Assembly (NCBI RefSeq): GCF_006345805.1
Contig: NC_043017.1
Location: forward strand, 24,986,001-25,050,000
Length of the DNA stretch: 64,000 nt
DNA from: Octopus sinensis
Taxonomy: Eukaryota
Direction: 5' to 3'
The notes below the pieces were generated by a model. The model saw nothing but the letters and a program-made list of their open reading frames with translations, ran no database searches and was not told the origin of the DNA. A program made the translations under genes and the position numbers. This document shows positions 36,507 to 59,659 of this stretch, piece after piece (position 1 is the stretch's first letter; the number at the start of each line of letters is the position of its first letter).

Positions 36507-36555
36507 GTGCTCAGCAAAATAATTTTCTCACAGTAATGCAAGAATCTCCAGCAAG
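36507..36555 (+). CDS. ZDHHC14: ZDHHC 49-nt exon ending in a U12 (AT-AC) donor
   Basis: Acceptor gttgttctttttccag|. Reads (R)AQQNNFLTVMQESPA(S) in phase with the upstream exon (C|GT = Arg), aligning with the ZDHHC14 segment SQQTGFLNALKDSPAS. Followed by |ATATCCTTTT. Confidence 0.93.
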
Positions 36556-36565
36556 ATATCCTTTT
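36556..36565 (+). other. U12-type (minor spliceosome) 5' splice site, AT-AC subtype
   Basis: ATATCCTTTT matches the U12 donor consensus RTATCCTTT exactly at the point where protein similarity stops. Confidence 0.93.
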
Positions 36566-36725
36566 GAAAATCTAATACAATATTACAATGTTTATGTTTG
36601 ATGATATTACATTTTCATGAAAATTTCTGAATTTCTTTCTTTTTGTTTTTTTTTTTTGGATTTTCAATTATCTAGACAGACTTGTCGACTGCTCTTCGAT
36701 TGAGATTAATGATAACCGCATCTAC

Positions 36726-36778
<53 letters not shown>

Positions 36779-36957
36779 CTTTATTTCTTTCTACATGAAT
36801 AAACTTGACTGCTTGTATTATGTACCTTTTCCTCTTCTCATTTTAAATTTAGAAACACATACACACACACTAATATATATATATATATTTATTAATACTT
36901 AGCAGAAGCAATGGAGTGACGGTTACACACACACACACACACACATATTCATACATA

Positions 36958-37030
<73 letters not shown>

Positions 37031-37424
37031 ATAGGCATATATAGTGTGAATGTGTAAAGAAAAAAAAATGTAAACTATAACCAAATGAAAAATTATGAAT
37101 TGTTGATGTAGAAACATTTAATTCCATCTTTTCCATGTCTGTCTTTCTCTTTCTCTCTCTCTATTTCTCTTTCTCCCTCTCTCTCACTCACTCACTCACT
37201 CTCTCTCTCTCTCTGTGTCTCTCTCTATTTAATAAGAATAATTCATTGAACTTCTAAATATAATATCTCTTGCATCATTCAGAGACTGGTAACGTGATTG
37301 ATGGAGGTGTAGATGCTGTTGCAGTTGTTATTTCAGTCAATCAATCAATTAATCAATCAATAATTGTCTGTTTCTGGCAGGCATGTTGCTGGTTTCCAAG
37401 GCTGTCTCTTTCTCTCTCTCTCTT

Positions 37425-37462
<38 letters not shown>

Positions 37463-37649
37463 ACTCTCTCTCTCTCTCTCACACACACATACACACACAC
37501 ACACATACACACACACACACACACTCACTCACACACACACACACACATGTATATATATGTGCGTGTGTATGTTTATATATGTATGTGTGTATATATATTT
37601 TTGTGTATACCTGTGTGTGTACATGCATATATATGCATATCTATTTGTG

Positions 37650-37685
<36 letters not shown>

Positions 37686-38012
37686 CATTTGTGTGTGTGT
37701 TGCTAACATAGATGATACATGCAAAATAAAGAGTACCTATTGATTATTTTTTTTTAATCAAACAAATTAAAAAAAAAAGATCAATACTTCAGAGGATACA
37801 TATATTGACCAGTTGGTGGGACATTTAATTTCACCTCTAGATAAACATATGATAAATTTTTGGCGGTTTACTGCTTCTTGTTATTATAGTGTTACTTTAT
37901 TTTCTACTTAATTTGTAATTTTTTTAAGAATATTCAATTAAATACATAAAATTTGAAGTCAGAATTTAAGGGGATGCAACTAGATTCATTTATTCATTTA
38001 TTCATTTATTTA

Positions 38013-38404
38013 TTTGTTTCAGTCATTTGACTGTGGCCATGCTGGAGCACCGCCTTTAGTCGAGCAAACCGACCCCAGGACTTATTCTTTGTAAGCCTAG
38101 TCTCTTTTGCCTATCAGTCCCTTTTGCTGAACCGCTAAGTTACGGGGACGTAAACAGACCAGCATCGATTCTCAGTGATGTTGGGGGAGGGGGCAAACAC
38201 AACACACAAACATACACATATATATATATACATATATGCGACGGCCTACTTTCAGTTTCTGTCTACCAAATCCACTCACAAGGCTTTGGTCGGCCCGAGG
38301 CTATAGTAGAAGACACTTGCCCAAGGTACCACGCAGTGGGACTGAACCCGGAACCATGTGGTTGGTAAGCAAGCTACTTACCACACAGCCACTCCTACGC
38401 CTAT
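38013..38404 (-). mobile_element. tRNA-derived SINE family 1
   Basis: Full-length reverse copy. Further diverged copies lie at about 6170-6450, 14490-14920, 16200-16780, 20660-21270, 26620-27430, 42670-43040 and 47090-47480. Confidence 0.88.
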
Positions 38405-38489
38405 TGTAGATGTAGATGTTTTTGTTTTAACCTCCACTAAATCAGAAGAAACAAAAAAAAAAATGTGTCTTCATTAGTTTCAAATACTT

Positions 38490-39480
38490 CCAGACAATCA
38501 GGGCAGATTTCCATCCTTCCCTTCTTCAAATCAGGCATCAGCTGCCTAGGTACCCCACTTGGCACACACTTTCTGGTCCCTAAGGTCTTCCACCATCTTC
38601 TAGAATGCATTGACTACTGTTCACTTGTACACCAAGCTCACAGATGGTGACTCTTCAGTTTGCGTGATTCACTTTGTCCATTCACTCGCGATTCATGTCA
38701 GTAGCTGCAGCTGATGACCTCCTGTTGCATAGTTTGTCTGTCTTCAAATGCTGATTTCCATGTACTAAGCCTTCATTTCTGGATCTCAAAGATGCGGCCA
38801 TATTTCATCTCCTGTCACCAGATTGGGAAAAATAAATCGCATCTTCATTGGGTTCAAATGCTTCCATCTGACCAGAGCAGATCTCCACCCTTCCCTTCTT
38901 CAAATTGGGTGTCATCTGCCTAGGTACCCCTCTTGGTACACACTTTCCAATACCTAGAGTCTTCGACCATTCTCTGTAATGCATTGAATGCAGTCCATTT
39001 GTGCAGCAAGCTCATGGATAGTGTCTTGTCTATCTGCACAGATCATCTCGTCCACTTGCTTGTGATTCAGGTCAGTCGTTGCAGCTGATGACCTCCTACT
39101 GCACAGTTTGTCTTGAAATGCCAGTTTCTATGTATGAAGCCTTCATTTCTGGACCATAAAGATACAGCCACATTTCATCTCCTGTCACCAGACTGGGGAA
39201 AATAAACCCTGTCTTCATTGGATTCATATACCTCCATCTGGTCAGAGCTGATTTCCACCTTTCCTTCTTCAAATCGGATGTCATTTGCCTAGGTACCCAA
39301 CTTGGAACACACTTTCTGATTTCTAAAGTCTTCCACCATTTTCTATAATGCATTGACTACAATCCACTTGTACAGCAAGCTTGAGGATAGTGACTCATCT
39401 GTCTTTGCGAATCACTTTGTCCACTCACTGGCAGTTCATATCAGTAGTTGCGGCTGATGATTGCCACTGTGTGGCATGTC
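38490..39480 (-). mobile_element. Three tandem copies of a mariner transposase fragment of about 370 bp
   Basis: RKCVPSWVPRQMT...LVTGDEMWLYLYGPEMK carries the mariner WVPR and TGDE motifs. The anchor gcctaggtaccc occurs at 38544, 38918 and 39287. Confidence 0.8.
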
Positions 39481-40416
39481 CTCAAGGTTAATTTGTTCAT
39501 CTTTAACCCTTTAGAATCCTGATTAGTCTGTTAAATATAATGCTTTTTCAATCACATTGTCTTGAATTAATCATACTTGTATGTTCAAAATTTTGATGAT
39601 GTGACTATATTTTTAGAATGGCATTGACGGGTAGATGCAACAGGCTTGATCTAGCTGGTTTGAACATAAGACAGGTGGAATATTTAAGCCAGATTTGGCC
39701 AGTTTAAATGCTAATGAGTTAAACTTCATTGATCTGCTCACATTGCTTTTGTCAATGGTGTGTCTCTAAGTAACTAATAAGCCTTCTGTGGACGTCAGAC
39801 AACCTGTACACCTTCGTTAAGAATTGTTGTAATTAAACAGAGTGCCTCTTTATGTCTGATATTGCCTCAGTTATGTACCCTGGACTTTTTATATAGTACT
39901 GTGCCTATGTTAGAAACAGTTATTCTTGTTTTTCTCACCTGAAACATTTGTAATAAGAGTTAACTAATGCAAAAGTTTTATCCTCAATATCCCCACCTTT
40001 TTTTTGTATCTCATGATTGAAAGAAGTTTCATATTTTATATCATTCCTGCAATTGTTCTTGGATTTCCCATGCAAAATTGCTTAGTCTCCTGCAAACCAT
40101 GTGATTACTTACTTGAGAGTATTCTGTTTGGATAATATGCTACAGCTGATCAACTGAGCATTTTGGTTCCAAACTCATTAGGAACTTGGTGGTTGAATGG
40201 TTTATTAAATTTAGCTGAGAGGGAACGTTACCGGTAACTAAAAGCTACAAGTCAATTTAAGAGCTACCATGCAACCACTTGACCTGCTAGAAATAGCACA
40301 GCCAAATCTCCCATCATATAATATACTGTCTTAAAAAAAAAGGAAGGATATATTGGACAATGAAGTCAATGTCAGATTAGGTCCAGAAAATTTATAAAAG
40401 GAAAAAAATTGGTTAA

Positions 40417-40636
40417 CCCTTTTGTTACCAACCCAACTGAAACCAGCTCTGGTTCTGAATACAAATGTCTTGTTTTCATAAGTTTTGAATTAAAATCTTC
40501 CACCAAACCTTAGTCACAATTTATGTTCCTAACACTAGCTTAATGATAACTAAGTTATTTTGCTAAATTCTTTGTTATAGTTAAAGTAATTGAAAGAAAC
40601 ACAGAGCATCTCAAAATAAATACAGTAAAGAAAGGG
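40417..40636. mobile_element. TTAA-flanked MITE family B
   Basis: TTAA|CCCTTT...GAAAGGG|TTAA; same body as 759-979 (reverse) and 57548-57768. Confidence 0.85.
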
Positions 40637-40912
40637 TTAACCAATGGTTGAAATATTTGAACAGAGCTGACTTTAAGGAAACTACTGTAACCAAACTTCC
40701 ATTGTCATTGTCATCATTTCTTCAATATCTAAATATTATTTTTCAGTCACATCACCACCACCACCACCACCACCAATACTACCATTAACATCATCATCAT
40801 CATCACTCTTGCTTTCCCATACCAACTTGGGCAATGTTTTATCGTTGGACACCAACTGTTTTTGCCATAATACATTCATTATATGTATTTTTTTTTTATT
40901 TATTTATATAAC

Positions 40913-41294
40913 ACTAGCAGTATCGCCCGGCGTTGCTCAGGTTTGTAAGGGAAATAACTATAAAGCATTTTTAGAGAGTTATAGCCAAAAAATAACAAAA
41001 AAATGGAAAAAAATGATGGTAAATTTTTTTTTAGTTAAAAAAGGTGGAGTTGCGTCCCCTAGACAGTTTGCGGTTTGTGTTTCTGATTCTCGACCCCATG
41101 TCGAATTTATCGATTTTTTTCAGAACTGGGGGAACTTTTCAAAATTTTCGCTGCGTTAGTTTTGAATTATGACATTGGGCTATGTGTGTGTCAAGTTTCA
41201 TCAGAATCGGTTGAAAGCCGTGGTCAGGGTGAGGGTACAAGCAAACAGACACACAGAAACACGCACAGACAAACTGCCGTTTATATAGAGAGAG
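40913..41294 (+). mobile_element. Non-autonomous Helitron-like element (Lep1/MINE-type ends)
   Basis: Starts actagcagtatcgcccggcgttgctc and has a 3' part gtcaagtttcatcagaatcggttg...acaagcaaacagac...aaactgccgtttatatag. No TIR or TSD seen. Confidence 0.5.
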
Positions 41295-42291
41295 ATTTTC
41301 CCTCCAGATTCTGAAACAACAGATGATCTCTATATTCATAATGATCACTTTATTTTAAAATACTCATTATCATATTCGTCATCATTTGTAATTTCTTTAT
41401 TCATTGACTTTTATAAATCTTACTCGTTAAAGTAACCAAATCCAATTATTTTTTCATTGTGTTTTTGGTTAATTTCACTAAAATAAAACCAAACCATTGT
41501 AGCTTTCTCCCACACATTAATTAAGCTCAGCTAAACAAACGATGAAATCATAGACAACAAAATGGTTGGTACTAATTATTAAACTGCAGCACAGTAAGTA
41601 GATTCTAATTACTTTACCTTTTTGGTGTAAAAAAAAAAATTTTTGCTGTTTTTTTGAGAATAGGTTTATTTTCATATTTTATTATTTTTCTTCCTTTTGA
41701 GATTTAGAATAACTCTTCACCTACCACCTGATGAATATTCTCGGCGTGGAAGCACATCTGATATATAACTCTGTCCATAGCCATTTTGGTTGTTCTGTCA
41801 AAGAGGAAAACAAAAACAAAAAAAAACCTACTCCACCTCTCAGCTTTTTCCACACATTACTTCAAATTTTGTTCTCTGTGTGTGTGTGTGTGAAATTATC
41901 AGAGTAGAATCATTTCTCTATCATCTGTTGCAATGTCCCTCCCTTGAACATCCCCTCCCTCTATCTTTCTGTCTCTGTCTACATTGTTGTTGTTCCCTAA
42001 CAACCAGCCTTCCGCATTTCCCACTTGCCCGATTCCTGATCCTTTTATGTTTCTGAAATGCCCTTCCCCATCAATGGTATCAGCCGCAGCCCTGTTTCAA
42101 CTTTGCACTTAAGTCACGTGAAGCGGCGTGACTCATCGATAATTATCAGGAAACATTCCCCCTTTCAAAACCTGCCCCTTGTCCGTATTCATTCCCTTTC
42201 ACATGTTGATCTATGAAAAGTCTGATTTCTTTATAACTCATTTCCTCCATTCTTGTGAAAAAAAAAAACTTTCTGAGTGAGCTATTAGAGA

Positions 42292-42340
<49 letters not shown>

Positions 42341-42610
42341 GCAACAACAAAATGAAGTATCGTTGTTCAAACAGGCAAACTCTTCTACAGTGTTGTTTAT
42401 CATGAGATGCATTTAAGATGTGACTAGATTCTCTCTACTTTTGATAATCTTTGTTTTTGATATATTCTAAGTGAAAAAAAAAAAAAAAGGCAAAGGCAAA
42501 AATTAAATTTTCAATGTTATAAATTAACAATTAATCTTAGATTAATGGAATTCACTGCAATTTTTATTTATTTATTTAAATGAGTCAGTATCTTTTTATT
42601 ATCATATTTT

Positions 42611-42655
<45 letters not shown>

Positions 42656-45600
42656 TTTATTTCTTTATAGGTGCCAGTGTGAGTGTGTGGTAAGAAATTT
42701 GCTTCACAGCCACATGGTTCCAGGTTCAATCCTACTGCATGGTACCTACTATAGTCTGAGGCCAATCAAAGCCTTGTGAGTGGATTCGGTAGACGAAAAC
42801 TGAAAGAAGCCTATTGTATATGTGTGTGTGTCTATATTTGTCCCCCACTACCACTTGACAACCAGTGTTGGTGTGTTTACATCCCTGTAATTTAGCAGTT
42901 TGACAAAAGAGACCAATAGAGCAAGCACCAGGTTTAAAAAATAAGTACTGGAGTTTATTCATTTGATTAAGATTCTTCAGGACGGTGCTCCAGGATGGCC
43001 ACAGTCTAATGACTAAAACAAAAGATAAGAAATAAAAGATATCTAACCCTTCTCACAAATCCTTATGTATCTATCAAGTTCCCTCTGCGACAAGTGTTAC
43101 CATACCTTACACTTGAATTTCATGACTAAACTTTATTAAATGCTTTGTTCATGGCTTACCCCAAGGTTTCCCTACCAGATGATCTTGCCTTTAAAATCTG
43201 CCCTGCCATTCTTTCCTCTGATATTCTAGTCACATGCCTGTAGTACCAGAGCTGTGGCCTTTCAATCAAATAAGAAGCAGTTCGGTTGAAGCAGCTCCCT
43301 GATCTTTGCACTCTATCAAGGAACAAACTCTAGCAACCTTCCAGATGAACCCTATTTTGGTTATGCAGGGCTCCAGCTGGATCATTTGCTGATGGTTCTA
43401 TCAGAATAGAACCCTCTGGAAAGTACCTCTGATGACGCTTCCTTCATGACCCCCCCCCACCCAGGAGTATGTGGGCAATGAAGATAGAAGTTTATTTAAC
43501 TACAGTACTCTAGTACAGGTTTTCACTAATGCCTCTATCTCTTGCTTTAGCTTCTATTTCTAGCAGGTCACTATCTTACAAACAGTCTTATTTCAGATTT
43601 TTTCCCTCTCTCCTGGTTTAATTAGCAGACAATTTAATTAAATCATTTCTCATTATCTTTTCTCTCTTAGTGGACTGGTTTTAGATAAACAATCGTAAAA
43701 CACCAGCTTAACGGTGTTTTAGTATTTAATTCCATTGTCCTGCCATGAAAGAGTTGTCAGTTTACATAGGTCGCCCTCTCAGGATTGAGGAGATAAACAC
43801 TATTCACATATGGACGTTGAATTTGATAAACTGTACACTTTCTTTACTATTAAGCTGTAGCTCTGAACAAACAGGATATTTTCTGTCTATTCTCTTCATC
43901 TGCTAATACTGCTTCAGTTGTCTTATCTCTTTGTCTGTTTTCTTACAGCTTAATCAGAAAAAGAATAACACTACACTTAACCTTTTATAAAGTCTTTGAA
44001 ACTGATTTTGAAAAAAAAAAGCAATGGGGATACTACACCTCATTGATCGATGTAGTTGGTTGTGTGCGTCTTATAGACAAAAATAGGTAGCATTCTATTA
44101 CGTCTTGTTTGCATTTTGTGGCCTGTTCTGATCTCTTTTTTCTTAAAAATCCTCTTAATTCTATTTCAGTCATATTGTGTGTGTATGAATGAGAAAGGTT
44201 TTATTCATTCAGTCATCCAAACTAAAATACTTATAATAAAAACCCTGCCTCCCCAAGGGCATATCAGGTTTCTTTTCTGTTCAAAAAAATAATAAAATAA
44301 GTGATTATCCCCCAAAAGGTTATTTCCTTTCCTTACAGGAAGCTGTCATTCTTCATTTATTCCATTTACTGTATTGATTCCTGTCGTGGTGGTCCACTTT
44401 TTTAGATGCTTTGATTTCCAGTAATTCTATCCTATAAGCATTTATAACTTTCTCACTTCATGATTGAATACTTGCCAGATTAGGAAGTGCATCCACAAGG
44501 GAAAACCCTACTTCAATAATGCAACTTATTTCAGCTGTGTATGTGTGTGTTAGACTTTAGTTATCTCTTAACTTTGGCTGTCCTTATTACAACGATGCTA
44601 GTGTAAGTATATCTATCTCTGTAACTGAAACTCTGCTAGCACTATCTCACCACCTGTTACATTCTCCCTGTGCAACTTCTACCTCACACTACTTCTCTGC
44701 AGGAATGGAATAGACTCTAAGAAAAAAGAGAGACAGCTGGACAAACAGACAGATGGAGTTGATATTTGTTACATCACTGTCTAACAAATAAAACTCAGTC
44801 AGTGCATGCAGGCTGTCCTCAGTATTCAATAAGGGAGCTTCTACAGAGTTGTTTGATCTGATAGAAACAGTAGCCACAATCTTCCTCAAATCATCCTCAA
44901 CTATCTTAAAGGGTATATTGAACAGTTTATTAAGTTCTTAATGCCAAAAAAAGATGGGATAGTTACACCTGGAATATCTTTCGTCATAGGTCTGTTTGAT
45001 CAGGTCTGATCTGGGTTAACCAACAACGACAAGGAAGTTTAATCTAAGCCAACAAGCTAGAAATAACAACTAAATTCCCATCAGATCACACTCAAATTAA
45101 GAACACGTTGAACTTCACATGTGTGTGTGTGTGACTAAGAGGAAATCACCTGCAGTGTTTTTCTTCTTTTTCTTTTTCTAGCAATTAAAAAGTAGTAATT
45201 ACGATATATCAGGTGTTAGGTTTTACCTGTAATTAAGTCTTGGACATTAATGCAGCAACCAGAATAATTAATCGCAAAAACATCATCAAAATGCAAGATA
45301 TGTCTATAAGATATAAATTCATATTTAATTAACAAAATGATTTTTGTATTAGTCACAGTGGTGATGGTAGTGGTAACAGCAAAGGTTTTTTTTTTTCTTA
45401 GTTTCATTTTTAATCACCATAAAGCTCAATATTTTCAGCTAAAGAAAAAAGTCTTCATAATCTAGGATTCTGCTACCTTGGTCGAATGGACAATTTTCAA
45501 CAGTATTAAGGATGTCACATACAGAAAGACATGAGTTGTGGCTTTCATTCTTTACCAAACAGCATTAACTGTGAAGAAGGTAATCCTATGAAATGCCACA

Positions 45601-47010: not shown

Positions 47011-47042
<32 letters not shown>

Positions 47043-48819
47043 AATAAATCTCTTTTGATCACCAGAAGTTATAAATTACTGGACTTTTTTATTCTCTCGT
47101 TTAAGTCATTTTACTGCAGCCATACCTTTAAGGGTTTTAGTAAAAAAAAATTGACCCCAGGTGTTATTTTGATTTTTTAATCCTTGTACTTATTCTGTAG
47201 GTCTCTTTTGCTGAACCACTAAGTTACAGGGACATAAACACACTAACACCGCATGTCAAGCAGTGATGGGACAAACACAGGAGCAAAAATACACACACAC
47301 ACACACACACACACATACATACATGCACAACAGGCTTCTTTCAGTTTGTGACTACCATATCCACTCAGTTGGCCTGAGGCTGAGGTAGAAGGCATTTGTC
47401 CTATGTGCCACACAGTAGGACTGAACCCAGAACCATATGGCTGGGAAGCAAACTTTTTACCACACAGCCATTCGTGAGCCTATATGTAGAATATTTTTTA
47501 ATACATTATAACTGAAACACTCCAATTTCCAATACTCAGAGTTGCTTGTTTCCAATCATCAGTTGGTAAATTGAGTCTGGTTTTTTTTTTTTTTAAATAC
47601 CCACTGTCTGAATATTTTTTTAAATACGAAATGAAAGTTGAAGAAAACGCTTATATTTTTGTTCCTTCATTTAACCCTTTAGTGTTCGCATTATTCTGCC
47701 AAAATTAATGCTTTTTTATCCAAATTGTTTTGAACTAATCAGGCATTATCTTGTAGCTATGAGATTTTGATGAGGTAGCTGTTAATTTTTAAAATGATAT
47801 TGTAGGGTCGGTGTGAGAGGTCAGATCTGGCCAGTTTGAATATAAAACAGGCAGAATACTTTTGGCCGGATATGGCCGGTTTATATGCAAAAGGGTTAAA
47901 AACATTTATGGAGGACACGTGCAAAAATGGCTGCTTCAAGTTCGCATTTTAAAAATTTCATTTCTGGTTTTGTTATGGTTTTGTTAATATTATTACAAAT
48001 ATCATAAACTCCATACAATCAAAGTCATAAAATTGTGTTGCTGTTTAAACATTAGATATGATATACAGATGGCTATTGAAGAGTTTTCTGTAACCCTTTA
48101 GCATTTGGATTTCTCTGTCAAATGTAATGCTTAATTTATTCACGTTGTTTTGAATTAATCACACATTGTCTTTTAGCTTCAAGATTTCAATAATGTAATT
48201 GTTAATTTTGAGAATGACTTGTAGAGTAGATGTGAGGGGCTGCACCTGGCCAGTTTGAACATAAAGCAAGTAGAATATTTGGGCCAGATACAGCCAGTTT
48301 AAATGCTAAATTGTTAAACATTGAACTGGAAGTCTTGAATTGGAAATTCATCCCCTCCTATGTTTGCGCCCTATGGTTATCTGTGTTTCTGTCTATCTAA
48401 ATCAAATATGATTGTTATTTTGTTTTCTGTAACCCTAGTTGATGATGTATTTTGGATTTGGTAGCTGACTGTGTTTAAATGTCCGTCCTCTAATTTGATG
48501 TATCGAATATTGAAAAAATAGACAAACCATTAATTTTCTCCATTTGCATTTAACGAGGATGAAGATTTATTATTGAAAGAGAAAAGGAACATCATAAAAT
48601 CTCTCTGAATGATAAAATTCGTTACCGGAAAATCCATTTAATTTTAGTAGGAATTATTTGTAAAAGTATAACTATAAATACATTGATTAAGTACTGGTCA
48701 TTGGTCAATTATCTTCATATTGTCTGTCTTTACATAGACTTTAAGAAAAATACCAACCATTTTAGGTAATAAATTATCATATAACTCCTTCATAATTACC
48801 AATGCACCTCTCTCTCTCC

Positions 48820-49290
48820 CTCTCTTACTCCATTCCCCCACTAGCCTTTTTTTCTCCCCTCTTCATTTTTTCACCATCTCTTTCCTCTTCTCTCTTTCTC
48901 TCCCTCTCATATCTCTCTGTCTCCTCCTCCTCTTCTTTTCCCTCTCTCCCTTTCTCACTATCTCTTTTATTCCCCGTTTTTCTATCACCCTTTAGCTTTC
49001 CCCTTTTCTCTCTCCTCTCTTCCTTTCCTTTTCCTTTCCTTTCTCTCCCCCTCTCCTCACCCCCCTATTTTTCTATCTCCTTTTCTCTCTCTCCCTTTCT
49101 CCTTTTCTCTCTCTCCCTTTCTCCTTTTCTCTCTCTCTCCCTTTCTCCTTTTCTCTCTCTCCTCCTTTCTCCTTTTCTCTCTCTCCCTTTCTCCTTTTCT
49201 CTCTCTCTCCCTTTCCCCTTTTCCCTCTCTCTCCCTTTCTCCTTTTCTCTCTCTCTCCTCACTCCCCCATCTCTGTGTTTTCCCCCTTTT
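48820..49290 (+). repeat. Polypyrimidine (CT-rich) tract with about 22-nt tandem units, just upstream of exon A
   Basis: ccctttctccttttctctctct repeated at 49080-49260. Confidence 0.9.
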
Positions 49291-49428
49291 TTTTTTTACA
49301 TTACTCTGGCCAATCATGGTATTGTCCAGGGAACAGAACATTGTCACATTCCTGCTGCACATTGCAATCATGTTAGCTTTCATTCATTTATTATTATCAT
49401 AAATAACTATTTTTTTTCCCACCGATCC

Positions 49429-49447
49429 TTCCTTAACCTTTCTGCAC
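49429..49447 (+). other. U12 branch point TTCCTTAAC plus AC acceptor for alternative exon A
   Basis: TTCCTTAAC at 49429-49437 followed by ctttctgcAC|. There is no AG between the in-frame TAA (49434-49436) and the exon. Confidence 0.93.
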
Positions 49448-49550
49448 TATTATCGAAGCGATTGTCTGCTTCTTCTCTGTCTGGTCAATTATTGGATTGG
49501 CTGGCTTTCATACCTATTTAACCACATCAGAGCAGACAACCAATGAAGAT
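49448..49550 (+). CDS. ZDHHC14: ZDHHC alternative exon A (103 nt; TM4 + TTxE motif)
   Basis: AG|T gives Ser, then [34 protein letters not shown]. Ends at a phase-0 U2 donor |gtgagt. Confidence 0.95.
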
Positions 49551-51635
49551 GTGAGTTACTATTCATTTCCTGAATGCAAACGATCTTTATATATTATATA
49601 TCGGTTGAGTTCTGCATCAAAGTTGGTTTTTTTTTTTAATCCTTCATCTTTTCAAAAAAAAAAAAAATTTTTTTTGTGGTATATTCTTCTTATTGTGGCT
49701 TTCGTTTGCATGAGCCAAGGGTCATCTAAATATTACTACCTCAATATTAACTGCATATGTGTCTGTCATGACTGTTGTTGCTTTGTGAACATTGCTATTT
49801 AAATCTTCATCGCATTGTCATTTCACTTTCATTTCACATGATCTTTCCTAAATCATCATCATTATAATAATAATAATAATAATAGCTGTTCAGTTACAAT
49901 AGTTTTATCCAGCTGCATAAAAATTCCAGGTTAATTATGAATTAAAATTGAAGTTACCTATGTTGTTTGTCTGTTGATCCGTTTTCCTGCTTTTGGTTAC
50001 TTTTTCCTTTCTTTATTGTGAGATCCTTTATTTGAAGTTTCATATTGAAACAGCTTATGTTCCTCACTTCCTACCACTTTTTTTTTTTACTTTTAGTTTG
50101 GTCAATTTATTGTACCATTTTTTAAAATGAGAAAATCATTATTTCCTCTCATGAGTTTCATTCTTTTTTATTTATTTAAATTTTGTTTCTAATTCAGAGC
50201 AGGGCCACTTATTTGATTGGCCTTCAAGCACCAACGGGCACACCTCAGCCTCTGTCCCATAGCTGTGCTATCTCCTTTCTCTGCCTTTTCTATCACCACT
50301 ATAATGGCTTCTGCTCCTTTGAGCTGGCTGGTTTTATACATCCATCAAACAGGCATTCCCAGCCCATTTTCCCCTCTACATCTCATCACCCTTGGTGCAT
50401 TTTACAGTAATGACTATGCCAAGAGTCATGGTATCTGTTCAGTTCCTTCAGACTGAGCAAAGAAAAAACAAAAAAAAAAAGATCTACTGATAGTTAGGGG
50501 TCACCAAGGATTTCCTAAAACACAAGGTCAACTTGAAAATGTGTGTTTCTGATCATTGACATAACCAGTCATCTTAGCTGTTTGTTGTTTAACCCTTTAG
50601 CATTCAGATAATTCTGTCAAATGTGATGCTTATTTATTCACATTGTTTTGACTTAATCATGCATAATCTCATAGCTTTGAGATTTCAGTCTTTAGAATGA
50701 CAGTGTGTGGTGCGTGTAAGAGGTCAGATCTGGCCAGTTTGAAAATAAAGCAGGAAGAATATTTTGGCTGGATCTGGCTGGTTTAAATGCTAAAGGGTGA
50801 AACTACATGTTAAAGAAATAAAAATTGCAGCAATAATGGCTGCTCAGTTTTGACACATCCTCTCCAACCATGTCACACATTAAAGACACACATTTACAAA
50901 GTTTTTTGTTTTTGTCATTCTTTACTCTCCCTACGAAATGCTATGCAGTATTTATTCCGATTCTCTCTGTTCTGGGTTCAGATCTCAGAGAGATCATCTT
51001 TGGCTACCCATATCTATGCCGCCAAAGACGGAGGCTTCCACTCGAGGGCCAATGAGGCTTGGCACTAATGTCATCACAGATACTGCTATCGGAACGTAAG
51101 CAGAAGGAACAAATACCACAAGGTATCTCATTTGGCACTCTAGTACCTCTATCAGTCCACCTCTTTGGATTGGTACTTTCTTGTTGATCCCGAAAGGATA
51201 AAAGGCAATGTTGGCCTCAGCGAGAATTGAACTAAGAGCACAGCGTATCAGACTGCCAGGCAGTTTATCCTGTGGCCTGGTGGTTAGGCTGTTGCAGTCA
51301 TGATTGCAAGATTGTGGTTAGCATTCCTGGACCAGGTGGTGCATTATGTTCTTGGGCAAAACACTTCACTTCTTATTGCTCCATCCACACAGCTGTAAAC
51401 AAGTAAATTCTGTGACAAACTGGTATTGCATTCAGTGGGAACATTGTCACTTTTACCCCATAGGAACTGGGTAACTGGCACTGTGAGTCTTAAGGACCTG
51501 AGAGAGTAATATCCAGGAATTGATGAAGATAACAATGAGTCTATCCAGCGCTCTAACAAGTCTGCTAATTTGCCATCTTTGAAGTGACAACCAGGAATCA
51601 AAACATATCTGAAGGAATTTGCCAGGAGCTGATTT

Positions 51636-51666
<31 letters not shown>

Positions 51667-52814
51667 TCATCTCTCTCAGATTAATTTTACTCTGAGATGC
51701 TCCATAAATTCTAGATAAGAATATTAACTATCATTCTTTTTTTTTTTTTCCTTTTTCTGCTCATTATTAAAATCTTACATATATTTTTTTAATCATAAAC
51801 AGCTTCCGATTCTGTCAGCTAGCAGACAGAAATAATATGGTACTTCTTGTGTGCTAAACTAACAGACTACATACCAACAAGTCAACCCCACACCACAACA
51901 AAACCCTCACCAACCATCCGTCTCTCCCTCTGCTCCTGTTACTGTTCTTCTTTTTTTTATTCCCCCCTCTTTCTGCTTGCTGTTGTAGTTTTTAACATTG
52001 TTGCAGAATTGCTACAATTCATGTTAATGTTCTGCAGAGGCAGAGACGGAATCATTTTTAGCAATTCAACAACAAAAATCAAAAAAAAAAAAAAAATCAA
52101 CTGTGATATTGAAATTGACAAAAATTCTTATTACCACTCAGAAATAATTTATTCTATTAATTTAATTGAATTTAATTTTATTTTCTTCATTTCCACTTTC
52201 AGTTGTATTTTACAAAACCCGTACCCAAACAAGCATGTTCCCACCCACATACTTTTTTTTTTTGCCAAATATGGCAACCATACATAAATTCTGTTCTTGT
52301 TGTTACTGTAGCTGTTGTTGCTGTTACTGTTGTTTGTTGTTGCTGTTCGTGTTGTTTCTGTTAAATGCAATAAACATATATATTTTTCTGATCACCGACC
52401 CGTTGCCAAATATCAGAACGAATTTTACATTTCCCCATCAACCATCCATTACAAATGGATACATACCTGCTCGGTTTTTTATTTTTTTAAACCATTATTT
52501 GTTGAAAATTCATTCCCCAATGTCATTTTATGGAGAAGGGAAAAAACACATAAACAAATAAAGCCCGAAACATTTGTCTTTGATAACTACCCCCTGAACA
52601 GCCCCTTCAATGCCTATAAATGACATTTGAAGTCTGTTAAGGCTGCTGATAGATTTGCAAGAACATGAAACAAATTTCTTTTTTTTTTTACACAGGAAGG
52701 GAAGATTTTTTTTTTTTACCAGTTTTGCCATTAGTTTTGTGGAGAATATCAATTCTTCATTTATTAGTTATAGATTTTCTTACAAAAAACATTATTATCA
52801 TTATTGATTCTGTG

Positions 52815-53490
52815 AGCTGGCAGAATCATTATTGTGACTGATAAAATGCTTAGTGGCTCTTTACATCCTGGGTTCAAATCTTACCAGGGTCAACTTGGCC
52901 TTTCATCCTTTTTGGGCCGATGAAGTAAGTACCAGTTGAGCACTTGAGTCAATGTAATTGACTTATCTTCCCTTGGCCTTGTTCCATAAATTTGAAATCA
53001 TCATCATCATCATCATCATTATTATTAAGGTAGCGGGCTGGCAGAATCATTAGCACACCTGTTGAAATGCTCAGCAGTATTTTGTCTGTCACTATGTTCT
53101 GCGTTCAAATTCTGCCAAGGTGGACTTTGCCTTTCATCCTTTCAGCGTTGATAAAATAAGTACCAGTCAACTATTGGGATCAGTGTGATCGACTGTCCAA
53201 CCCCCCACAAAAATCCAGGCCATGTGCCTATTATAGTAGGAATGATTATTATTATTATTAAGGTAGTGAGCTGGCAGAATTGTTAGCAAGTTGGGTGAAA
53301 TGCTTAGCAGTATTTCATCCGTCTTCCTGTTCTGAGTTCAAATTTTGCTGAGATCAGCTTTGCCTTTCATCCTTTCAGGGTCGATAAAATAAGTACCAGT
53401 TGGGTGCTGGGGTTGATGTAATTGACTATCTGCCTCCCCCAAACTTCAGACCTTGTACCTATAGTAGAAAGGATTATTATTATTATTATT
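52815..53490 (+). mobile_element. Head-to-tail cluster of three SINE family 2 copies between exons A and B
   Basis: Heads at about 52815, 53030 and 53265, each ending in a (CAT)n or (ATT)n tract. Further copies at 29705-29930 and 57775-57990. Confidence 0.8.
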
Positions 53491-54413
53491 ATTATATTAT
53501 TATTATATGCAGTGAATTGACAGAGTTGTTTGAGAGGACAGCAAAATACTTTGTCTGCCTCTTAAACATTTGAGCTTAAATTTTTGTCTAAGTTAACTTT
53601 GTTTACCATAGTTCAGGGCCAGGAAAATAATACTAACAACCTAAAACTAGCAGTCTTGTACCCATGTTTAAAGTCATTCGAATTCTAAGAGCATCAGACA
53701 AGACACCTTGTGGTATTTCTTGTGACTCTTTTCAACAGAAACACTGTAATAAAAGGTTCTTTGATACAAACTTACTGTTTTAAAGCGATCTATATTTAAG
53801 TCCCCCCATATAAATCTCATGTTAACCTATGTTCCAAACTCTTTAATAATGACCTAGTTATTTTAATAAACTCTTCATTATTTTCATAATTAATTGAAAC
53901 AAAGCCATTGTATTTCAACTGAAATCTGGTAATGAAAATTTTAACGGTATTCAGTTGTATCTCTCTACATAATGGCGGTGCCTCAGCATGGCCACAGCTC
54001 GTGAGCTGAAACTAGATAAAATACAATAAATAAAATAATAATTTCAAATTTATCTGTTGGGAGCAGAGGGAGAGATGGGCTGAATAAAATCAATACCGGT
54101 AATATACTGATATATTTTCAGTGTGGCTATTATACCTTTCTTTTATGTGCTTTTGTAAAGAAAGTAAAAGTTTGCTTTAAAAGTTGTCAGAGCTTTCCCT
54201 GTCTCTGTCTGTACTGTACAGGCAGTTAAGCTTATATTCTCATTATTTTTCTATTGTAAAGCTTTTTAAAGTAATTTTTAAAAACTTATTTTGAGACTAT
54301 TGTACGCAGTGTTTTCTTTTTACACACAAAAAAAAAACCAACAAACAAACAAAATCTCTGTGCTTAGTCTATGAATGTCTATGTGTGTTGTTTCTGCTAT
54401 TGTATTGTGAATG

Positions 54414-54432
54414 CTCCTTGACTTGGTCCTAC
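54414..54432 (+). other. U12 branch point CTCCTTGAC plus AC acceptor for alternative exon B
   Basis: CTCCTTGAC at 54414-54422 followed by ttggtcctAC|, the same 10-nt spacing as for exon A. In-frame TGA at 54419-54421 and no AG before the exon. Confidence 0.9.
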
Positions 54433-54535
54433 TATGGTGGAAGCTGTAATTTGTTTCTTTTCTGTGTGGTCTGTTGTTGGTCTTGCTGGCTTCCATACAT
54501 ATCTGGCAGCCTCGGAACAGACCACAAATGAAGAC
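54433..54535 (+). CDS. ZDHHC14: ZDHHC alternative exon B (103 nt; paralogous TM4 + TTxE exon)
   Basis: (S)[34 protein letters not shown]. Same length and phases as exon A, 26/34 aa identical. U2 donor |gtaagt. Confidence 0.95.
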
Positions 54536-56185
54536 GTAAGTATAAACCAAATTGTTCTTAATAGAGAGAATACAAAGAAAGAAAAAGGAAAAAGATAATT
54601 TCATTTTCAAACAAGAGAGAAAGACATTGATGCAATTTGAAGGCTTAGCCTTTTTAGATTATAAAAAAATCTGATATTTTTATTAGATATCTATTGACTT
54701 GTCCTAAATATTTTTTCTCATAAGTAAATGTTGGTAAATTTAATATACCCCATTTCCCTTAATATATATATATATATAAGTTAGCAAAAATTTAGATTCA
54801 AATGAATATGGTACTTAATTTAGATGCACCAGAATTCTGTATGGTGTTATCCATAAAAATCCGTGGGGTGATTATAATTAAAATAAGCAACAAGAATGAC
54901 TCCGGTAATTTGGTACGATTGTTTTGTACTACATCATTTTATTTAACTTTTAATAAAATAGAAAGTTACACTCCGAGGTACAAGTCCGGGCAAGGTTGTT
55001 TATGGAAGGCCAGCAGTCGCCCATGCATACCGGCCTCTCCTCTCCACGCCACTGATGCTATTCAAGGGAAAGGCAAAGGCTGATACAGCTCGGTACCAGT
55101 GATGTCGCAACTCATTGCTACAGCTGAGTGAACTGGAGCAACGTGAAATAAAGTGTCTTGCTCAAGAACACAACACGCAGCCCGATCCTGGAATCGAACT
55201 TACAACCTCACGATCATAAGCTCGACGTTCTAACCACTGAGCCATGCGCCTTCACTAATAAGTACCAGTCAAATTAATGGTGATCGATATGGTTGACTAG
55301 ATCTCCCCTTAAAGTCTGTAACTTATTTCTCTGTGGTAAATCATTGCTATCACAATGGACTCAGGCTAACAACTTGATGGAGATGGCCTGGACAATTTCA
55401 AGGACCTTTTTTAGTTGTTTTACTGTGCTTCTTTTTGTGCCAGTGCCATGTAAAAGCACCCATTACATTCTGTAAAGTGGTTGGCTTTAGAGAGTGCATC
55501 CGGTTGTAGAAACCTGCTCAAACAAACATTGGATTCAGCACAGTCTTTTGGTTCTCACAGGTTCCTGTCAAAGTGTCCAGTTTATGCATGGTAAAATAGA
55601 CATAGACTGGCTGTGGAGAGCAAATCTCATTCTTTTGGATGTAAGCTGGACCTTGTCGGCAAAATAAGCATCAACAACATTCTTAAGTTAGACTAATCAT
55701 CTACCATAGCCCCCCCCCCTCCTCAAGTCAGCAGGAACATTGGCATGACATCTGCTTGTTCTGTGGAATGTTTGTGTTATTGTGGTGTGGCCATTTGTGC
55801 TTACCAAACAACATAAAAGAAATTTTTCTAAGACAGTTTCCATTCTCACTGTTAGAGTCATAGTATTGTTGAAGACGAGAATAAAATAACAATGTCAAGT
55901 TGTCTCATTTCACATCTTTTCCACTTCATTCTGATGATTCATGCCTCTTTCATAAATCAGTTTTTCTCTCTGTGGTTCCTGTAACATTATATATATATAT
56001 ATATATGTATATATATGAACTTTATTGAAGCTGTAGAGATTCACAAATTTTTGTTTTTTAATATGACCTGTCTGATGATTGGTTTTGTGAAGTTTTTGCA
56101 GCTCCAATATATAATTATTGTACTGTACTTTTGGTATTCTAGTACTATTTTCTCCACCTTGTCTTGCACCTATGTGCTATGATAC

Positions 56186-56232
<47 letters not shown>

Positions 56233-56263
56233 GGTTTGGAGATGATATACAGGTATTATATAG

Positions 56264-56460
56264 TAGAAGAAATAAGATACTCAGAAATCTGGATGGTTTT
56301 ATATTTATTATGTCACATGTTTTTATGAATCATATATTAGCGCTTGACTCCACTAGAGTGGACACAAGCTGTAATATATGATTTATAAAAACATCTGACA
56401 TATTAATAAATATCTGTAAATATAAAACCATCCAGATTTCTGAGTACCTTATTTCTTCTA
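56264..56460. repeat. Fold-back palindrome of about 200 bp in (TA)n
   Basis: 44-bp outer arms with 1 mismatch (56264-56307 / 56417-56460), a degenerate inner stem and centre ccact-ag-agtgg. Confidence 0.9.
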
Positions 56461-57297
56461 ATATATATATGTATATATGTATGTGTTTTAAATTGGTCCC
56501 TGAAATCATTGTTTTACTAAACTATTTATGACATATTTGCTGTCACAAACTACTTCCTCAACTACGTTTATTATACTAAACAGTTTCCCAAAATGTATTT
56601 GTTTTATTAAACTACTTTCTGAAATATAATTGTTTTACTAAACTGTTTCCTAAAATATTAAAATATATTATTAATTGCATATGTATTTTCAATTAACTTG
56701 CAAAACAATCATATTTTGGAGGGTTATATATGTTGGTATAATGTAATATACTATGTCTAACTGTAACTTTGTTTGATAGTATATTGTATGATATATCTTT
56801 AACTGTATACCTTAGCTTATGTGATATATCTGTAACTTTATTAGTATACTATGCAAGGTGTTGTCCAACTGGAATCCTATGTTAATTCATATTGTAATGA
56901 AACGTTGACTGATATTTCATTTTAAATATTAACCCTTTAGAAGGGGTAGTTTCAAGCGGGTTAGTATTAATAGAAGTTAACCCTTTAACTGCAAAATTAA
57001 ATTTCTTGGTTATCCCTGTGATAATGCTAAATATCTACCAAAATATAGACTTGGTATTTCTGCAAGTTCCAAGTCACATTGCCTCAATAAACGTGACATA
57101 TCTTGGCCAAAAATAATTTCAAACACGACATTCCTCAGCAAAAGATAGAATGCTATATAAAACTTGTTTTTGCAGTTAAGGGGAATGAAATTGTGAATGG
57201 TTATATCTGATTTCCTTCTGTTATTATCTAAACTTTAGTATCTCGTCACGCACACAGCCACATACATATCGCACTGACATATTTATTTCATTAATAG

Positions 57298-57407
57298 ATA
57301 AAAGGTTCCTTTTCATCCAAGAGAGGACAAGATAATTTTAATCCGTATAGCAGAGGGTCCATTTTTAAAAATTGCCTTGTTGTACTATGTGGACCCAATC
57401 CTCCAAG
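57298..57407 (+). CDS. ZDHHC14: ZDHHC exon, 110 nt, cytosolic C-terminal conserved region (PaCCT-type NPY..G...N motif)
   Basis: Acceptor tttcattaatag| and donor |gtaagt. [36 protein letters not shown](S) continues NED-IKGS as in ZDHHC9/14/18. Confidence 0.96.
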
Positions 57408-59520: not shown

Positions 59521-59659
59521 TTTAATCGACCGGAGAGGTTACGTTGTACCTGACAGTTCTCAGATACACAGTGACAGCTTCAACAGCTGTGTAAAAGAAA
59601 GTAACTCTGTCAACGTCAAACATGAATATTATGGTTCGACAACAGTGACGGAACAAAAG
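59521..59659 (+). CDS. ZDHHC14: ZDHHC exon, 139 nt
   Basis: Acceptor ctctttctctttccag| and donor |gtgagt. (S)LIDRRGYVVPDSSQIHSDSFNSCVKESNSVNVKHEYYGSTTVTEQK; SLIDRRG is the subfamily hallmark. Confidence 0.93.

What the first reader, a model, noticed from the sequence alone, without database searches (positions are those of the whole stretch)
36556..57297. Mutually exclusive duplicated exons in a zDHHC palmitoyltransferase, locked by U12/U2 spliceosome incompatibility
Seen in sequence: the 49-nt exon ends |ATATCCTTTT (U12 AT donor). Two 103-nt paralogous exons follow (A 49448-49550, B 54433-54535). Each has a U12 branch point (TTCCTTAAC; CTCCTTGAC) 10 nt before an AC acceptor, no AG acceptor after an in-frame stop, and a U2 GT donor (gtgagt; gtaagt). 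The next exon has an ordinary AG acceptor. Established: minor and major splice sites do not normally pair, and this incompatibility enforces the JNK (MAPK8/9/10) mutually exclusive exons. Inference: including both would need a GT(U2)...AC(U12) intron and skipping both an AT(U12)...AG(U2) intron; both outcomes also shift the frame (103 nt). The gene should therefore always use exactly one exon. Choosing B removes a 17,877-nt minor intron containing exon A; choosing A removes a 7,747-nt major intron containing exon B. I know of no description of this arrangement in a DHHC gene or a mollusc, but could not search.
Basis: partly seen in the sequence, partly recalled or inferred. Interest (0 to 1): 0.95.

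Follow-up and report, generated by a model that had tools for sequence, protein, structure and literature searches.

The report
U12-locked alternative exons in octopus ZDHHC
An octopus palmitoyltransferase gene carries two alternative copies of the exon for its fourth membrane helix, wired so that the rare minor (U12) and common major (U2) splicing machines can only ever include one; it is a new example of a mechanism already known in human genes, and it is shared by molluscs and a ribbon worm.

Summary
The window is the Octopus sinensis/vulgaris ZDHHC9/14/18-family gene. The 49-nt exon (36507-36555) ends at |ATATCCTTT. Exons A (49448-49550) and B (54433-54535) are 103-nt paralogues. Each has a TCCTTRAC branch site about 10 nt before an AC acceptor, no AG within 59 nt upstream, and a GTRAGT donor.

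RefSeq isoforms X2 (A) and X1 (B) differ only in this exon. RNA-seq contigs from cuttlefish (three sequencing runs) show exactly the predicted AT-AC junctions. All 295 models or transcripts that could be scored have exactly one copy. Joining both exons or skipping both gives premature stops.

- **It is not a cephalopod speciality.** The same architecture occurs in abalone (2 exons), scallop (3) and a nemertean (5). Alternative versions are annotated in chiton, other snails, mussels and oysters. Amphioxus has one exon behind the same AT-AC intron, and ZDHHC18 is a listed vertebrate minor-intron gene.
- **The mechanism and this topology are already described.** Known human cases are MAPK8/9/10, MAPK14, CEP170, CRTC1 and TMEM87A/B.

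Verdict: a real, ancient, apparently undescribed new member of a known kind. Interest is moderate (about 0.55), not 0.95.

The parts
29315..29452 (+). DHHC exon ([12 protein letters not shown]... through TM3), ordinary AG acceptor and GT donor
   Evidence: It is part of the window-encoded 228-aa stretch that matches O. sinensis ZDHHC9 isoforms exactly.
36507..36555 (+). 49-nt constitutive exon e1 (..AQQNNFLTVMQESPA + AG of the Ser codon)
   Evidence: conserved with cuttlefish over 36495-36565
36556..36564 (+). U12-type AT-AC 5' splice site ATATCCTTT
   Evidence: The same AG|ATATCCTTT is found in cuttlefish, abalone, scallop, Lineus and amphioxus and in mouse and human ZDHHC18 (PMC6717393 supplement).
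49429..49447 (+). U12 branch-site motif TTCCTTAAC and AC acceptor of exon A; no polypyrimidine-AG
   Evidence: conserved with cuttlefish from 49430
49448..49550 (+). Exon A, 103 nt: (S)[34 protein letters not shown], which is TM4 plus the TTxE motif. This is the ancestral-like version.
   Evidence: Present in XP_029649027.1 and O. vulgaris CAI9738206.1. 34/34 identical to cuttlefish A, 32/34 to abalone and oyster versions.
49551..49556 (+). U2-type donor GTGAGT of exon A
54414..54432 (+). U12 branch-site motif CTCCTTGAC and AC acceptor of exon B
   Evidence: 36 nt upstream of B are conserved with cuttlefish
54433..54535 (+). Exon B, 103 nt: (S)[34 protein letters not shown]. This is the more often annotated and assembled version.
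   Evidence: Present in 11 of the 13 retrieved Octopus models that match the window-encoded sequence exactly. 33/34 identical to cuttlefish B.
54536..54541 (+). U2-type donor GTAAGT of exon B
57298..57407 (+). Next constitutive exon ([17 protein letters not shown]...), ordinary ...ttaatAG acceptor
59521..59659 (+). Downstream constitutive exon (LIDRRGYVVPDSS...)
62812..62959 (+). Downstream exon (TNNKGTNTAQ...RLPPIN)

Best explanation
Exons A and B are a tandem duplicate of the exon encoding transmembrane helix 4 and the TTxE motif of a ZDHHC9/14/18-type (Erf2-like) S-acyltransferase.

**Ancestral state.** The ancestral gene had one such exon behind an AT-AC U12-type intron, and amphioxus still does. 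Vertebrate ZDHHC18 is a listed minor-intron gene with the same AAG|ATATCCTTT donor. The duplicated unit carried the U12 branch site, the AC acceptor, the exon and its U2-type GT donor.

**How the lock works.**
- The single U12 donor after the 49-nt exon can pair only with one of the U12 acceptors (A or B).
- Each alternative exon's U2 donor can pair only with the U2 acceptor of the next constitutive exon.
- The A-to-B interval is a hybrid (U2 5' site, U12 3' site), and so is e1-to-next-exon (U12 5' site, U2 3' site). Neither spliceosome should remove either one.
- Exactly one exon is therefore included.
- As a second safeguard, the 103-nt length makes double inclusion, double skipping or use of the in-exon cryptic AG produce premature stops.

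**Shown versus inferred.**
- Shown: the sequences, the paralogy, one-at-a-time use at exact AT-AC junctions, deep conservation, and the frame consequences.
- Inferred: that the minor spliceosome removes the upstream intron, that incompatibility rather than decay of aberrant mRNAs does most of the work, and any functional difference between the two TM4 versions. TM4 lines the acyl-chain pocket in DHHC9, so tuning of acyl selectivity is the leading guess.
For: **Splice signals.**

**Open reading frames.** Both isoform ORFs are intact. Including A and B together, skipping both, or joining A to the cryptic AG inside B all give stops.

**Isoforms.** RefSeq isoforms differ only in this exon.

**Transcripts.** Nucleotide-level junctions come from three independent cuttlefish RNA-seq assemblies mapped to the cuttlefish genome:
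- e1 45242-45290 joined to A 58264-58366 or to B 65713-65815
- then joined to 69277 onward

**Copy number in products.** 295 models or transcripts have one copy and 0 have two.

**Conservation.**
- The same architecture is found in cuttlefish, abalone, scallop (3 exons) and Lineus (5 exons). All 14 alternative exons keep CCTTRAY; 13 end in AC and 1 in AG.
- Amphioxus has a single exon with the same AT-AC intron.
- ZDHHC18 is listed as a minor-intron gene with 5' site AAG|ATATCCTTT (PMC6717393 supplement; bioRxiv 10.64898/2026.08.20.745718).

**Gene-model failures.** Gene models, apparently from GT-AG-only predictors, fail at this intron, for example read-through 'SPARYP..'.

**Selection.** Exon A is 34/34 aa and exon B 33/34 aa identical between octopus and cuttlefish, although A and B are only 71% identical in DNA.

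**Function.** TM1, TM3 and TM4 form the acyl pocket of DHHC9 (bioRxiv 10.1101/2022.12.12.520165). The octopus protein matches DHHC9 structure 8HF3 at E = 5e-134.
Against: - No read-level counts were available, so low-level A+B, skipped or cryptic-AG products that are degraded cannot be excluded.
- One of the 296 full-length proteins screened showed no copy of the exon motif and was not examined, so a skipped-exon model among them is not excluded.
- U12 dependence rests on consensus matches only.
- The U12 acceptors must be kept simply so that each exon can be joined to e1. Their conservation therefore does not prove selection for exclusivity.
- The 103-nt frame rule alone would hide most errors.
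- Minor and major sites occasionally cross-pair, or U2 uses the pyrimidine-rich U12 branch region (PMC8329584).
- What chooses A or B is unknown.
Confidence: 0.8

Rival explanations
1. Exclusivity at the mRNA level is mainly the result of frame-shift plus nonsense-mediated decay. On this view the U12 status of the upstream intron is an inherited passenger, and hybrid introns are in fact spliced at some rate but the products are destroyed.
For: - 103 nt is not a multiple of 3, and every aberrant combination gives an early stop.
- An in-exon AG 10 nt into each exon could serve a U2 spliceosome.
Against: - The A-to-B interval has no AG within 59 nt upstream of B, and no separate polypyrimidine tract is evident by eye in that sequence.
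- e1's donor ATATCCTTT is a poor U1 site.
- JNK-type hybrid introns were shown experimentally not to be spliced (PMC1874599).
- The two mechanisms are not exclusive, so this is a matter of share rather than of kind.
Confidence: 0.12
2. Choice and exclusivity are directed by competing intronic RNA structures: a docking site near e1 pairing with selector sequences before A or B, as in insect Dscam or 14-3-3 zeta.
For: - Clusters of 3 to 5 exons, as in scallop and Lineus, are classically handled this way.
- A 36-nt block upstream of exon B is conserved with cuttlefish, longer than the 18 nt upstream of A.
Against: - Octopus-cuttlefish comparison of about 35 kb against 77 kb found no conserved intronic block other than those abutting the splice sites.
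- The splice-site logic alone already scales to any number of copies.
- Short selectors could have been missed by BLASTN.
Confidence: 0.05
3. One of the two exons is a dead copy, an assembly duplication, or belongs to a second gene copy.
For: Exon A is rare: it is in 2 of the 13 retrieved Octopus models that match the window sequence exactly, and in 3 cuttlefish-type contigs against 44 for B.
Against: - A and B are only 73/103 nt identical, and both lie between the same flanking exons.
- Both are 33-34/34 aa conserved in cuttlefish, in the same order.
- Both occur in spliced transcripts with identical flanking exons.
- A is the version closest to the single exon of outgroups.
Confidence: 0.01

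Closest known systems
Human/vertebrate JNK genes MAPK8/9/10, exons 6a/6b (Letunic 2002; Chang et al. 2007, PMC1874599)
   Same: A tandem-duplicated exon sits next to a U12 intron, and the interval between the two copies is a U2/U12 hybrid intron that cannot be spliced, so one exon is chosen. Chang et al. propose that the hybrid intron arose by duplication of an ancestral exon together with part of its adjacent introns.
   Different: - In JNK the U12 intron is downstream, so the U12 5' site is the duplicated element and the hybrid is U12 5' site plus U2 3' site. Here the U12 intron is upstream and the branch site plus AC is duplicated.
- JNK uses GT-AG U12 termini; this case uses AT-AC.
- JNK exons are 72 nt and keep the frame, so there is no frame-shift safeguard.
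- JNK has two exons only; this gene has 2 to 5.
Human MAPK14, CEP170 and CRTC1 MXE clusters (Hatje et al. 2017, PMC5740500, Appendix Fig S18)
   Same: The U12 site is on the 5' side of the MXE cluster. CEP170 and CRTC1 use AT-AC introns, so the topology is the same as here.
   Different: These are different genes. According to that paper the CEP170 and CRTC1 MXEs are not found in other species, whereas the ZDHHC cluster is shared by mollusc classes and a nemertean. Those are two-exon clusters.
TMEM87A/TMEM87B exon 11/11a (Olthof 2019; review PMC8329584)
   Same: Interlocked U2 and U12 sites give mutually exclusive alternative exons with tissue-specific use.
   Different: A U2 3' site is embedded in a downstream U12 intron. 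I did not check whether those exons are paralogous.
Vertebrate ZDHHC18 (and probably ZDHHC14) minor intron
   Same: - Mouse and human ZDHHC18 are listed with minor-intron 5' site AAG|ATATCCTTT and TCCTTRAC branch sites.
- A mammalian ZDHHC18-like read-through model (P0113) places an ATATCC-type donor right after '..TPA', the position it has in octopus.
   Different: Vertebrates have a single exon and no MXE. They instead have three paralogous genes (ZDHHC9, 14, 18), each with its own TM4 sequence.
Docking-site/selector MXE arrays (insect Dscam and similar)
   Same: Arrays of more than two mutually exclusive homologous exons.
   Different: Those depend on competing RNA structures and U2 introns only. 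No such conserved elements were seen here.

Membership tests
U2/U12 spliceosome-incompatibility mutually exclusive exons | Two or more homologous tandem exons of equal length and phase, with exactly one in each mature mRNA | tested here: met
   - A and B are 103 nt, phase 1, 26/34 aa identical.
- Isoforms X1 and X2 differ only there.
- 295 products have one copy and 0 have two; one further protein showed no copy and was not examined.
- Cuttlefish transcripts carry A or B.
U2/U12 spliceosome-incompatibility mutually exclusive exons | The constitutive site on one side, and the matching site of every alternative exon, are U12-type | tested here: met
   By consensus only. The e1 donor is |ATATCCTTT. 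A has TTCCTTAAC-8 nt-AC and B has CTCCTTGAC-8 nt-AC. The same holds in five other species.
U2/U12 spliceosome-incompatibility mutually exclusive exons | The sites on the other side are U2-type, so the inter-exon interval is a hybrid intron | tested here: met
   The donors are GTGAGT and GTAAGT. The next exon has a ...ttaatAG acceptor.
U2/U12 spliceosome-incompatibility mutually exclusive exons | The hybrid introns are not spliced: no double-inclusion or double-skip junctions at read level | tested here: inconclusive
   None was seen among annotated or assembled products, but no read-level data could be examined. One protein with no detected copy of the exon motif was not examined.
U2/U12 spliceosome-incompatibility mutually exclusive exons | Removal of the U12-side intron depends on U11/U12/U4atac/U6atac | not testable with these tools
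   Needs knock-down or a minigene experiment.
U12-type AT-AC intron | 5' site /ATATCCTT, branch site TCCTTRAC close to the 3' end, no polypyrimidine-AG, AC terminus, exact junction confirmed in mRNA | tested here: met
   - Sequences.
- No AG within 59 nt upstream.
- The junction is fixed by the Ser codon AG|T in the proteins and at nucleotide level in cuttlefish.
- ZDHHC18 is a listed minor-intron gene with the same AAG|ATATCCTTT donor.
ZDHHC9/14/18 (Erf2-like) S-acyltransferase | DHHC cysteine-rich domain, four TM helices, TTxE motif after TM4, close similarity to DHHC9 | tested here: met
   - [12 protein letters not shown] and TTNE are present.
- Pfam PF01529 is recorded on the Octopus protein.
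- 8HF3 ZDHHC9 matches at E = 5.1e-134 over residues 54-353.
Docking-site/selector (competing RNA structure) MXE cluster | Conserved intronic docking and selector sequences able to pair | tested here: inconclusive
   Octopus against cuttlefish BLASTN shows no conserved intronic block away from the splice sites. Short elements could have been missed, and no folding test was done.

The most novel reading that the evidence does not exclude
The lophotrochozoan ZDHHC9/14/18 gene carries an ancient, expandable array of TM4 exons: 2 in cephalopods and abalone, 3 in scallops and mussels, 5 candidate copies in a nemertean.
- One-of-N choice would be guaranteed purely by spliceosome-type incompatibility, without RNA-structure selectors. 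That would make it the largest and oldest U12-locked MXE array I know of.
- The alternative TM4 helices, one wall of the acyl-chain pocket, would give one gene enzyme variants with different acyl-chain or substrate preferences. This would be the splicing counterpart of the vertebrate split into ZDHHC9, 14 and 18.
Probability: 0.3. Interest if true: 0.7.

Novelty: new member of a known kind. Interest (0 to 1): 0.55.

Why it matters
Spliceosome incompatibility is a textbook but very sparsely populated way of enforcing mutually exclusive splicing; one survey counted five human clusters. This case adds several things:
- An example outside vertebrates, in a different gene family.
- An evolutionary series with a clear starting point: one exon behind an AT-AC intron in amphioxus, and the same minor-intron donor in vertebrate ZDHHC18.
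- Expanded states with 2, 3 and 5 copies. These show that duplicating 'U12 acceptor + exon + U2 donor' automatically yields a one-of-N switch.
- A possible reason why this minor intron has been kept for so long in these lineages.

For palmitoylation biology it points to TM4 as a module that evolution repeatedly swaps. That can be tested directly by comparing the acyl-CoA selectivity of the A and B isoforms.

Practically, it marks a site where gene models apparently built by GT-AG-only predictors go wrong.

Tried and rejected
**Protein search, first attempt.** A 134-aa query returned only proteins of 233 aa or less and no cephalopod transcript. The tool appears to cap hit length near 1.75 times the query. 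A 348-aa chimeric probe (Batillaria N-terminus plus the window-encoded part) then found the Octopus and cuttlefish-type proteins.

**Locus look-ups that failed.** The look-up of encoding contigs found no gene on record with these products: P0167, P0146, P0270, P0321, P0177. No genomic loci were therefore obtained for Ostrea, Mytilus, Liolophura or Owenia.

**Single-motif statistics.** ATATCCTT and TCCTTRAC-N-AC are at chance frequency in the window. Only their exact placement and the composite pattern are informative.

**Search for conserved docking or selector elements.** Octopus-cuttlefish BLASTN found nothing beyond the splice-site-proximal blocks.

**Helix-face idea.** I considered whether the 8 A/B differences lie on one face of the TM4 helix. 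Simple 100-degree-per-residue arithmetic (my own, not a tool result) does not place them on one face, so I dropped it.

**Orthology of exon B.** Identities to the second version in other molluscs are 26-29/34, too close to its identities with the first version to decide. The exon order in scallop also differs. Whether there was one ancient duplication or several recurrent ones is left open.

**Transposase-like ORFs.** Pfam scans of ORFs in the introns that looked transposase-like to me gave no hit.

**Literature.** Searches for a description of MXEs in any ZDHHC gene, or of U12-based MXEs in molluscs, found none. The only ZDHHC entry seen in the human MXE catalogue is an unrelated ZDHHC2 candidate.

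Full report
**1. The observation**

Reading the window at the stated coordinates confirms every element.
- **Exon e1.** The 49-nt exon (36507-36555) follows an ordinary ...ttccag| acceptor and ends ...CCAGCAAG|ATATCCTTTT.
- **Exon A.** It spans 49448-49550 and is preceded by TTCCTTAAC, 8 nt, then AC. It is followed by gtgagt.
- **Exon B.** It spans 54433-54535 and is preceded by CTCCTTGAC, 8 nt, then AC. It is followed by gtaagt.
- **Next exon.** It starts at 57298 after ...cattaatag|.
- **Peptides.** In phase 1 the two exons encode [34 protein letters not shown] and [34 protein letters not shown].
- **Divergence.** They are 73/103 nt and 26/34 aa identical, with 15 synonymous and 8 non-synonymous codon differences. 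This is an old duplicate under purifying selection, not an assembly artefact.
- **No upstream AG.** There is no AG within 59 nt upstream of either exon. The first AG lies 10 nt inside each exon and is out of frame.
- **Intron sizes.** They are 12,892 nt (e1-A), 17,877 nt (e1-B), 7,747 nt (A-next), 2,762 nt (B-next) and 4,882 nt (A-B).

Taken singly the motifs are at chance frequency. However, both TCCTTRAC-N-AC matches in the 64-kb window end exactly at the first base of the two paralogous exons. A composite DNA-only pattern found only true copies of this exon on the + strand of about 315 kb of window plus related loci.

**2. What the gene is**

With either exon, the exons in the window join into an uninterrupted reading frame: [12 protein letters not shown]...SPAS[A or B][17 protein letters not shown]....
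- The B version is an exact substring of Octopus sinensis 'palmitoyltransferase ZDHHC9' isoforms and of an O. vulgaris protein. The A version is exact in O. sinensis X2 (XP_029649027.1) and O. vulgaris CAI9738206.1.
- The protein matches the solved human ZDHHC9 structure 8HF3 at E = 5e-134.
- The alternative exon corresponds to TM4 plus the TTxE motif. In the DHHC9-GCP16 structure paper, the acyl pocket is formed mainly by TM1, TM3 and TM4. The residues around the acyl tail are the variable ones, and the four GCP16 interfaces described there involve TM2, TM3, the polyproline helix and the zinc-finger motifs; TM4 is not mentioned (bioRxiv 10.1101/2022.12.12.520165).

**3. Are both exons used, one at a time, at AT-AC junctions?**

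- O. sinensis X1 (exon B) and X2 (exon A) are both 540 aa and differ only at the eight A/B positions.
- Logan RNA-seq assemblies of a cuttlefish (98-100% identical to the Acanthosepion pharaonis genome locus L002) give nucleotide-level proof in a sister lineage.
  - Contigs from SRR20545816 and SRR20545813 join e1 (...CTCCAGCAAG) directly to TATCATAGAAGC (exon A, 58264-58366).
  - A contig from SRR9970006 joins e1 to TATGGTTGAAGC (exon B, 65713-65815).
  - Each then continues into the next exon at 69277.
  - The excised sequences therefore begin ATATCC and end AC.
One showed no copy of the motif and was not examined.
- The only two-copy product is a 281-aa Nucella gene model (P0408). It begins inside the first copy and joins the two copies at an in-exon AG, so it looks like a prediction artefact.
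- Including A and B together, skipping both, or using the cryptic AG in B all run into stops within a few codons.
- Exon B dominates: 11 of 13 Octopus models, and 44 against 3 cuttlefish-type contigs. Exon A is the version closest to the single exon of outgroups.

**4. Evolutionary context: wider than the finding**

The architecture is not a cephalopod invention. Genomic loci show the same parts: a donor AG|ATATCCTTT, alternative 103-nt exons each behind CCTTRAY-N-AC and followed by GTRAGT, then a normal polypyrimidine-AG exon.

| Species (locus) | Copies of the exon |
|---|---|
| Cuttlefish (L002) | 2, same order as octopus |
| Abalone Haliotis rufescens (L003) | 2 |
| Scallop Pecten maximus (L001) | 3 |
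| Nemertean Lineus longissimus (L005) | 5 open copies; one has CAG instead of CAC |
| Amphioxus (L004) | 1, behind the same AT-AC intron |

- RefSeq isoforms carrying alternative versions of this exon exist for a chiton, Pomacea, Physella, Littorina, Mytilus (three versions), oysters, clams, Dreissena, Mya and scallops. A scallop isoform uses the third version.
- Priapulus, horseshoe crabs, amphioxus and vertebrate ZDHHC14 show one version only.
- Mouse and human ZDHHC18 are listed as minor-intron genes with 5' site AAG|ATATCCTTT and TCCTTRAC branch sites (PMC6717393 supplement).
- Read-through gene models betray the same ATATCC donor after '..SPA' or '..TPA' in Batillaria, a mammalian ZDHHC18-like model and Branchiostoma belcheri.

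The likely history is as follows. A bilaterian-age AT-AC intron preceded the TM4 exon. In the mollusc and nemertean lineages, the unit 'U12 branch site + AC + exon + GT donor' was duplicated once or several times.
- One version, I[IV]EAI[IV][18 protein letters not shown].., is nearly invariant from chiton to octopus at 30-32/34. This argues for a duplication before the mollusc classes diverged.
- Orthology of the second versions is unresolved, and scallop exon order differs.

**5. Mechanism**

- The lone U12 donor can use any U12 acceptor.
- Every alternative exon's U2 donor can use only the U2 acceptor of the next constitutive exon, because all intervening acceptors are U12-type.
- Inter-exon intervals and the skip-all interval are U2/U12 hybrids.
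- For the JNK2 hybrid intron, experiments showed it is not spliced and that flanking intron sequence sets the default exon (PMC1874599).
- Here the 103-nt length adds a frame-shift safeguard that JNK's 72-nt exons lack.

I could not test minor-spliceosome dependence or measure leakiness. I rate the combined explanation at about 0.8. 'Mostly nonsense-mediated decay, with U12 a passenger' is the main rival (about 0.12).

RNA-structure selection has no support. Octopus-cuttlefish intron conservation is confined to 18 nt upstream of A, 36 nt upstream of B and about 10 nt after e1. What selects A or B is unknown; the longer conserved block before B is the only lead.

**6. Comparison with what is known, and novelty**

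U2/U12 incompatibility as a cause of mutually exclusive exons is established for MAPK8/9/10 and TMEM87A/B (PMC1874599, PMC8329584).
- Hatje et al. counted five human clusters. They noted that in MAPK14, CEP170 and CRTC1 the U12 site is on the 5' side of the cluster, with AT-AC termini in CEP170 and CRTC1 (PMC5740500 and its appendix).
- Neither the mechanism nor the mirror topology is therefore new.
- The alternative isoforms are already in RefSeq.
- I found no paper describing MXEs in a ZDHHC9/14/18 gene or U12-locked MXEs in molluscs.

I classify it as a new member of a known kind. Its added value is an unusually deep and wide phylogenetic distribution, expansion to 3-5 copies, a clear single-exon ancestral state, and a position in the enzyme's acyl-binding wall. 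It also parallels the vertebrate solution of three paralogous genes.

**7. Verdict**

- Observation: confirmed.
- Interpretation: supported, with the corrections above.
- Interest: about 0.55. It is a neat, publishable comparative-genomics and splicing case, not a surprise in principle.
- Most novel reading still open: a scalable one-of-N array, independent of RNA structure, that tunes acyl selectivity. I give it about 0.3 probability.

Noticed in passing
L005 (Lineus longissimus) 5424-5526, 7248-7350, 8345-8447, 9095-9197, 9960-10062: There are five tandem, open, 103-nt versions of the TM4 exon between the ATATCCTTT donor (ends 3405) and the next exon (11727). Each has a CCTTAAY branch motif and a GTRAGT donor. 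The fourth has a CAG rather than CAC acceptor. Only the first two appear in the RefSeq isoforms retrieved (P0321, P0320). Versions 2 to 5 are very divergent (13-18/34 identical to the octopus exons).
   Followed up: partly
L001 (Pecten maximus) 19817-19919, 20379-20481, 24293-24395: Scallops have three versions of the exon. The third type (..FHTFLVATEQ..) is used in Argopecten irradians isoform X3 (P0344). It shares the FHTFLVA motif with Lineus exon 2 and with human ZDHHC9 TM4 (FHTFLVAL). This could be shared ancestry or convergence.
   Followed up: partly
Proteins P0088, P0113, P0338, P0154, P0158, P0277, P0408 (other species): Many deposited gene models are wrong at this AT-AC intron. Some read through the donor (..SPARYP..), some skip e1, some insert spurious exons, and one fuses two alternative exons at an in-exon AG. 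This is a systematic annotation failure at minor introns.
   Followed up: partly
window 48877-49258: A pure-pyrimidine CT-rich tandem repeat (period about 24, 91% matches) lies 190-570 nt upstream of exon A. BLASTN (low-complexity filter on) showed no match to cuttlefish. Whether it affects use of exon A is unknown.
   Followed up: no
window 54397-54432: The 36 nt upstream of exon B are conserved with cuttlefish, twice the length of the conserved stretch upstream of exon A (18 nt). This may be a regulatory element for the predominant exon.
   Followed up: no
window 62959 and beyond; proteins P0241-P0254: O. sinensis has at least 13 annotated isoforms. Apart from the A/B choice, they differ by small C-terminal cassette or alternative-site events just after ..RLPPIN, whose exon ends at 62959: N/DGC/G variants and optional NKTRSVLYESSSPKF. 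The O. bimaculoides model XP_014786603.2 reads through the donor at 59659.
   Followed up: no
window 28190-28679, 30498-31042, 39096-39353 (minus strand): ORF fragments in the introns looked to me like Tc1/mariner-type transposase remnants, but Pfam gave no match at E<0.01. Short SINE-like ORF motifs (..GFGRPEAI.EDTCPR..AVG.NP.PCG.) recur many times across the window.
   Followed up: partly
tool behaviour: the search for homologous proteins returned no hit longer than about 1.75 times the query length. Short queries therefore miss full-length eukaryotic proteins.
   Followed up: yes
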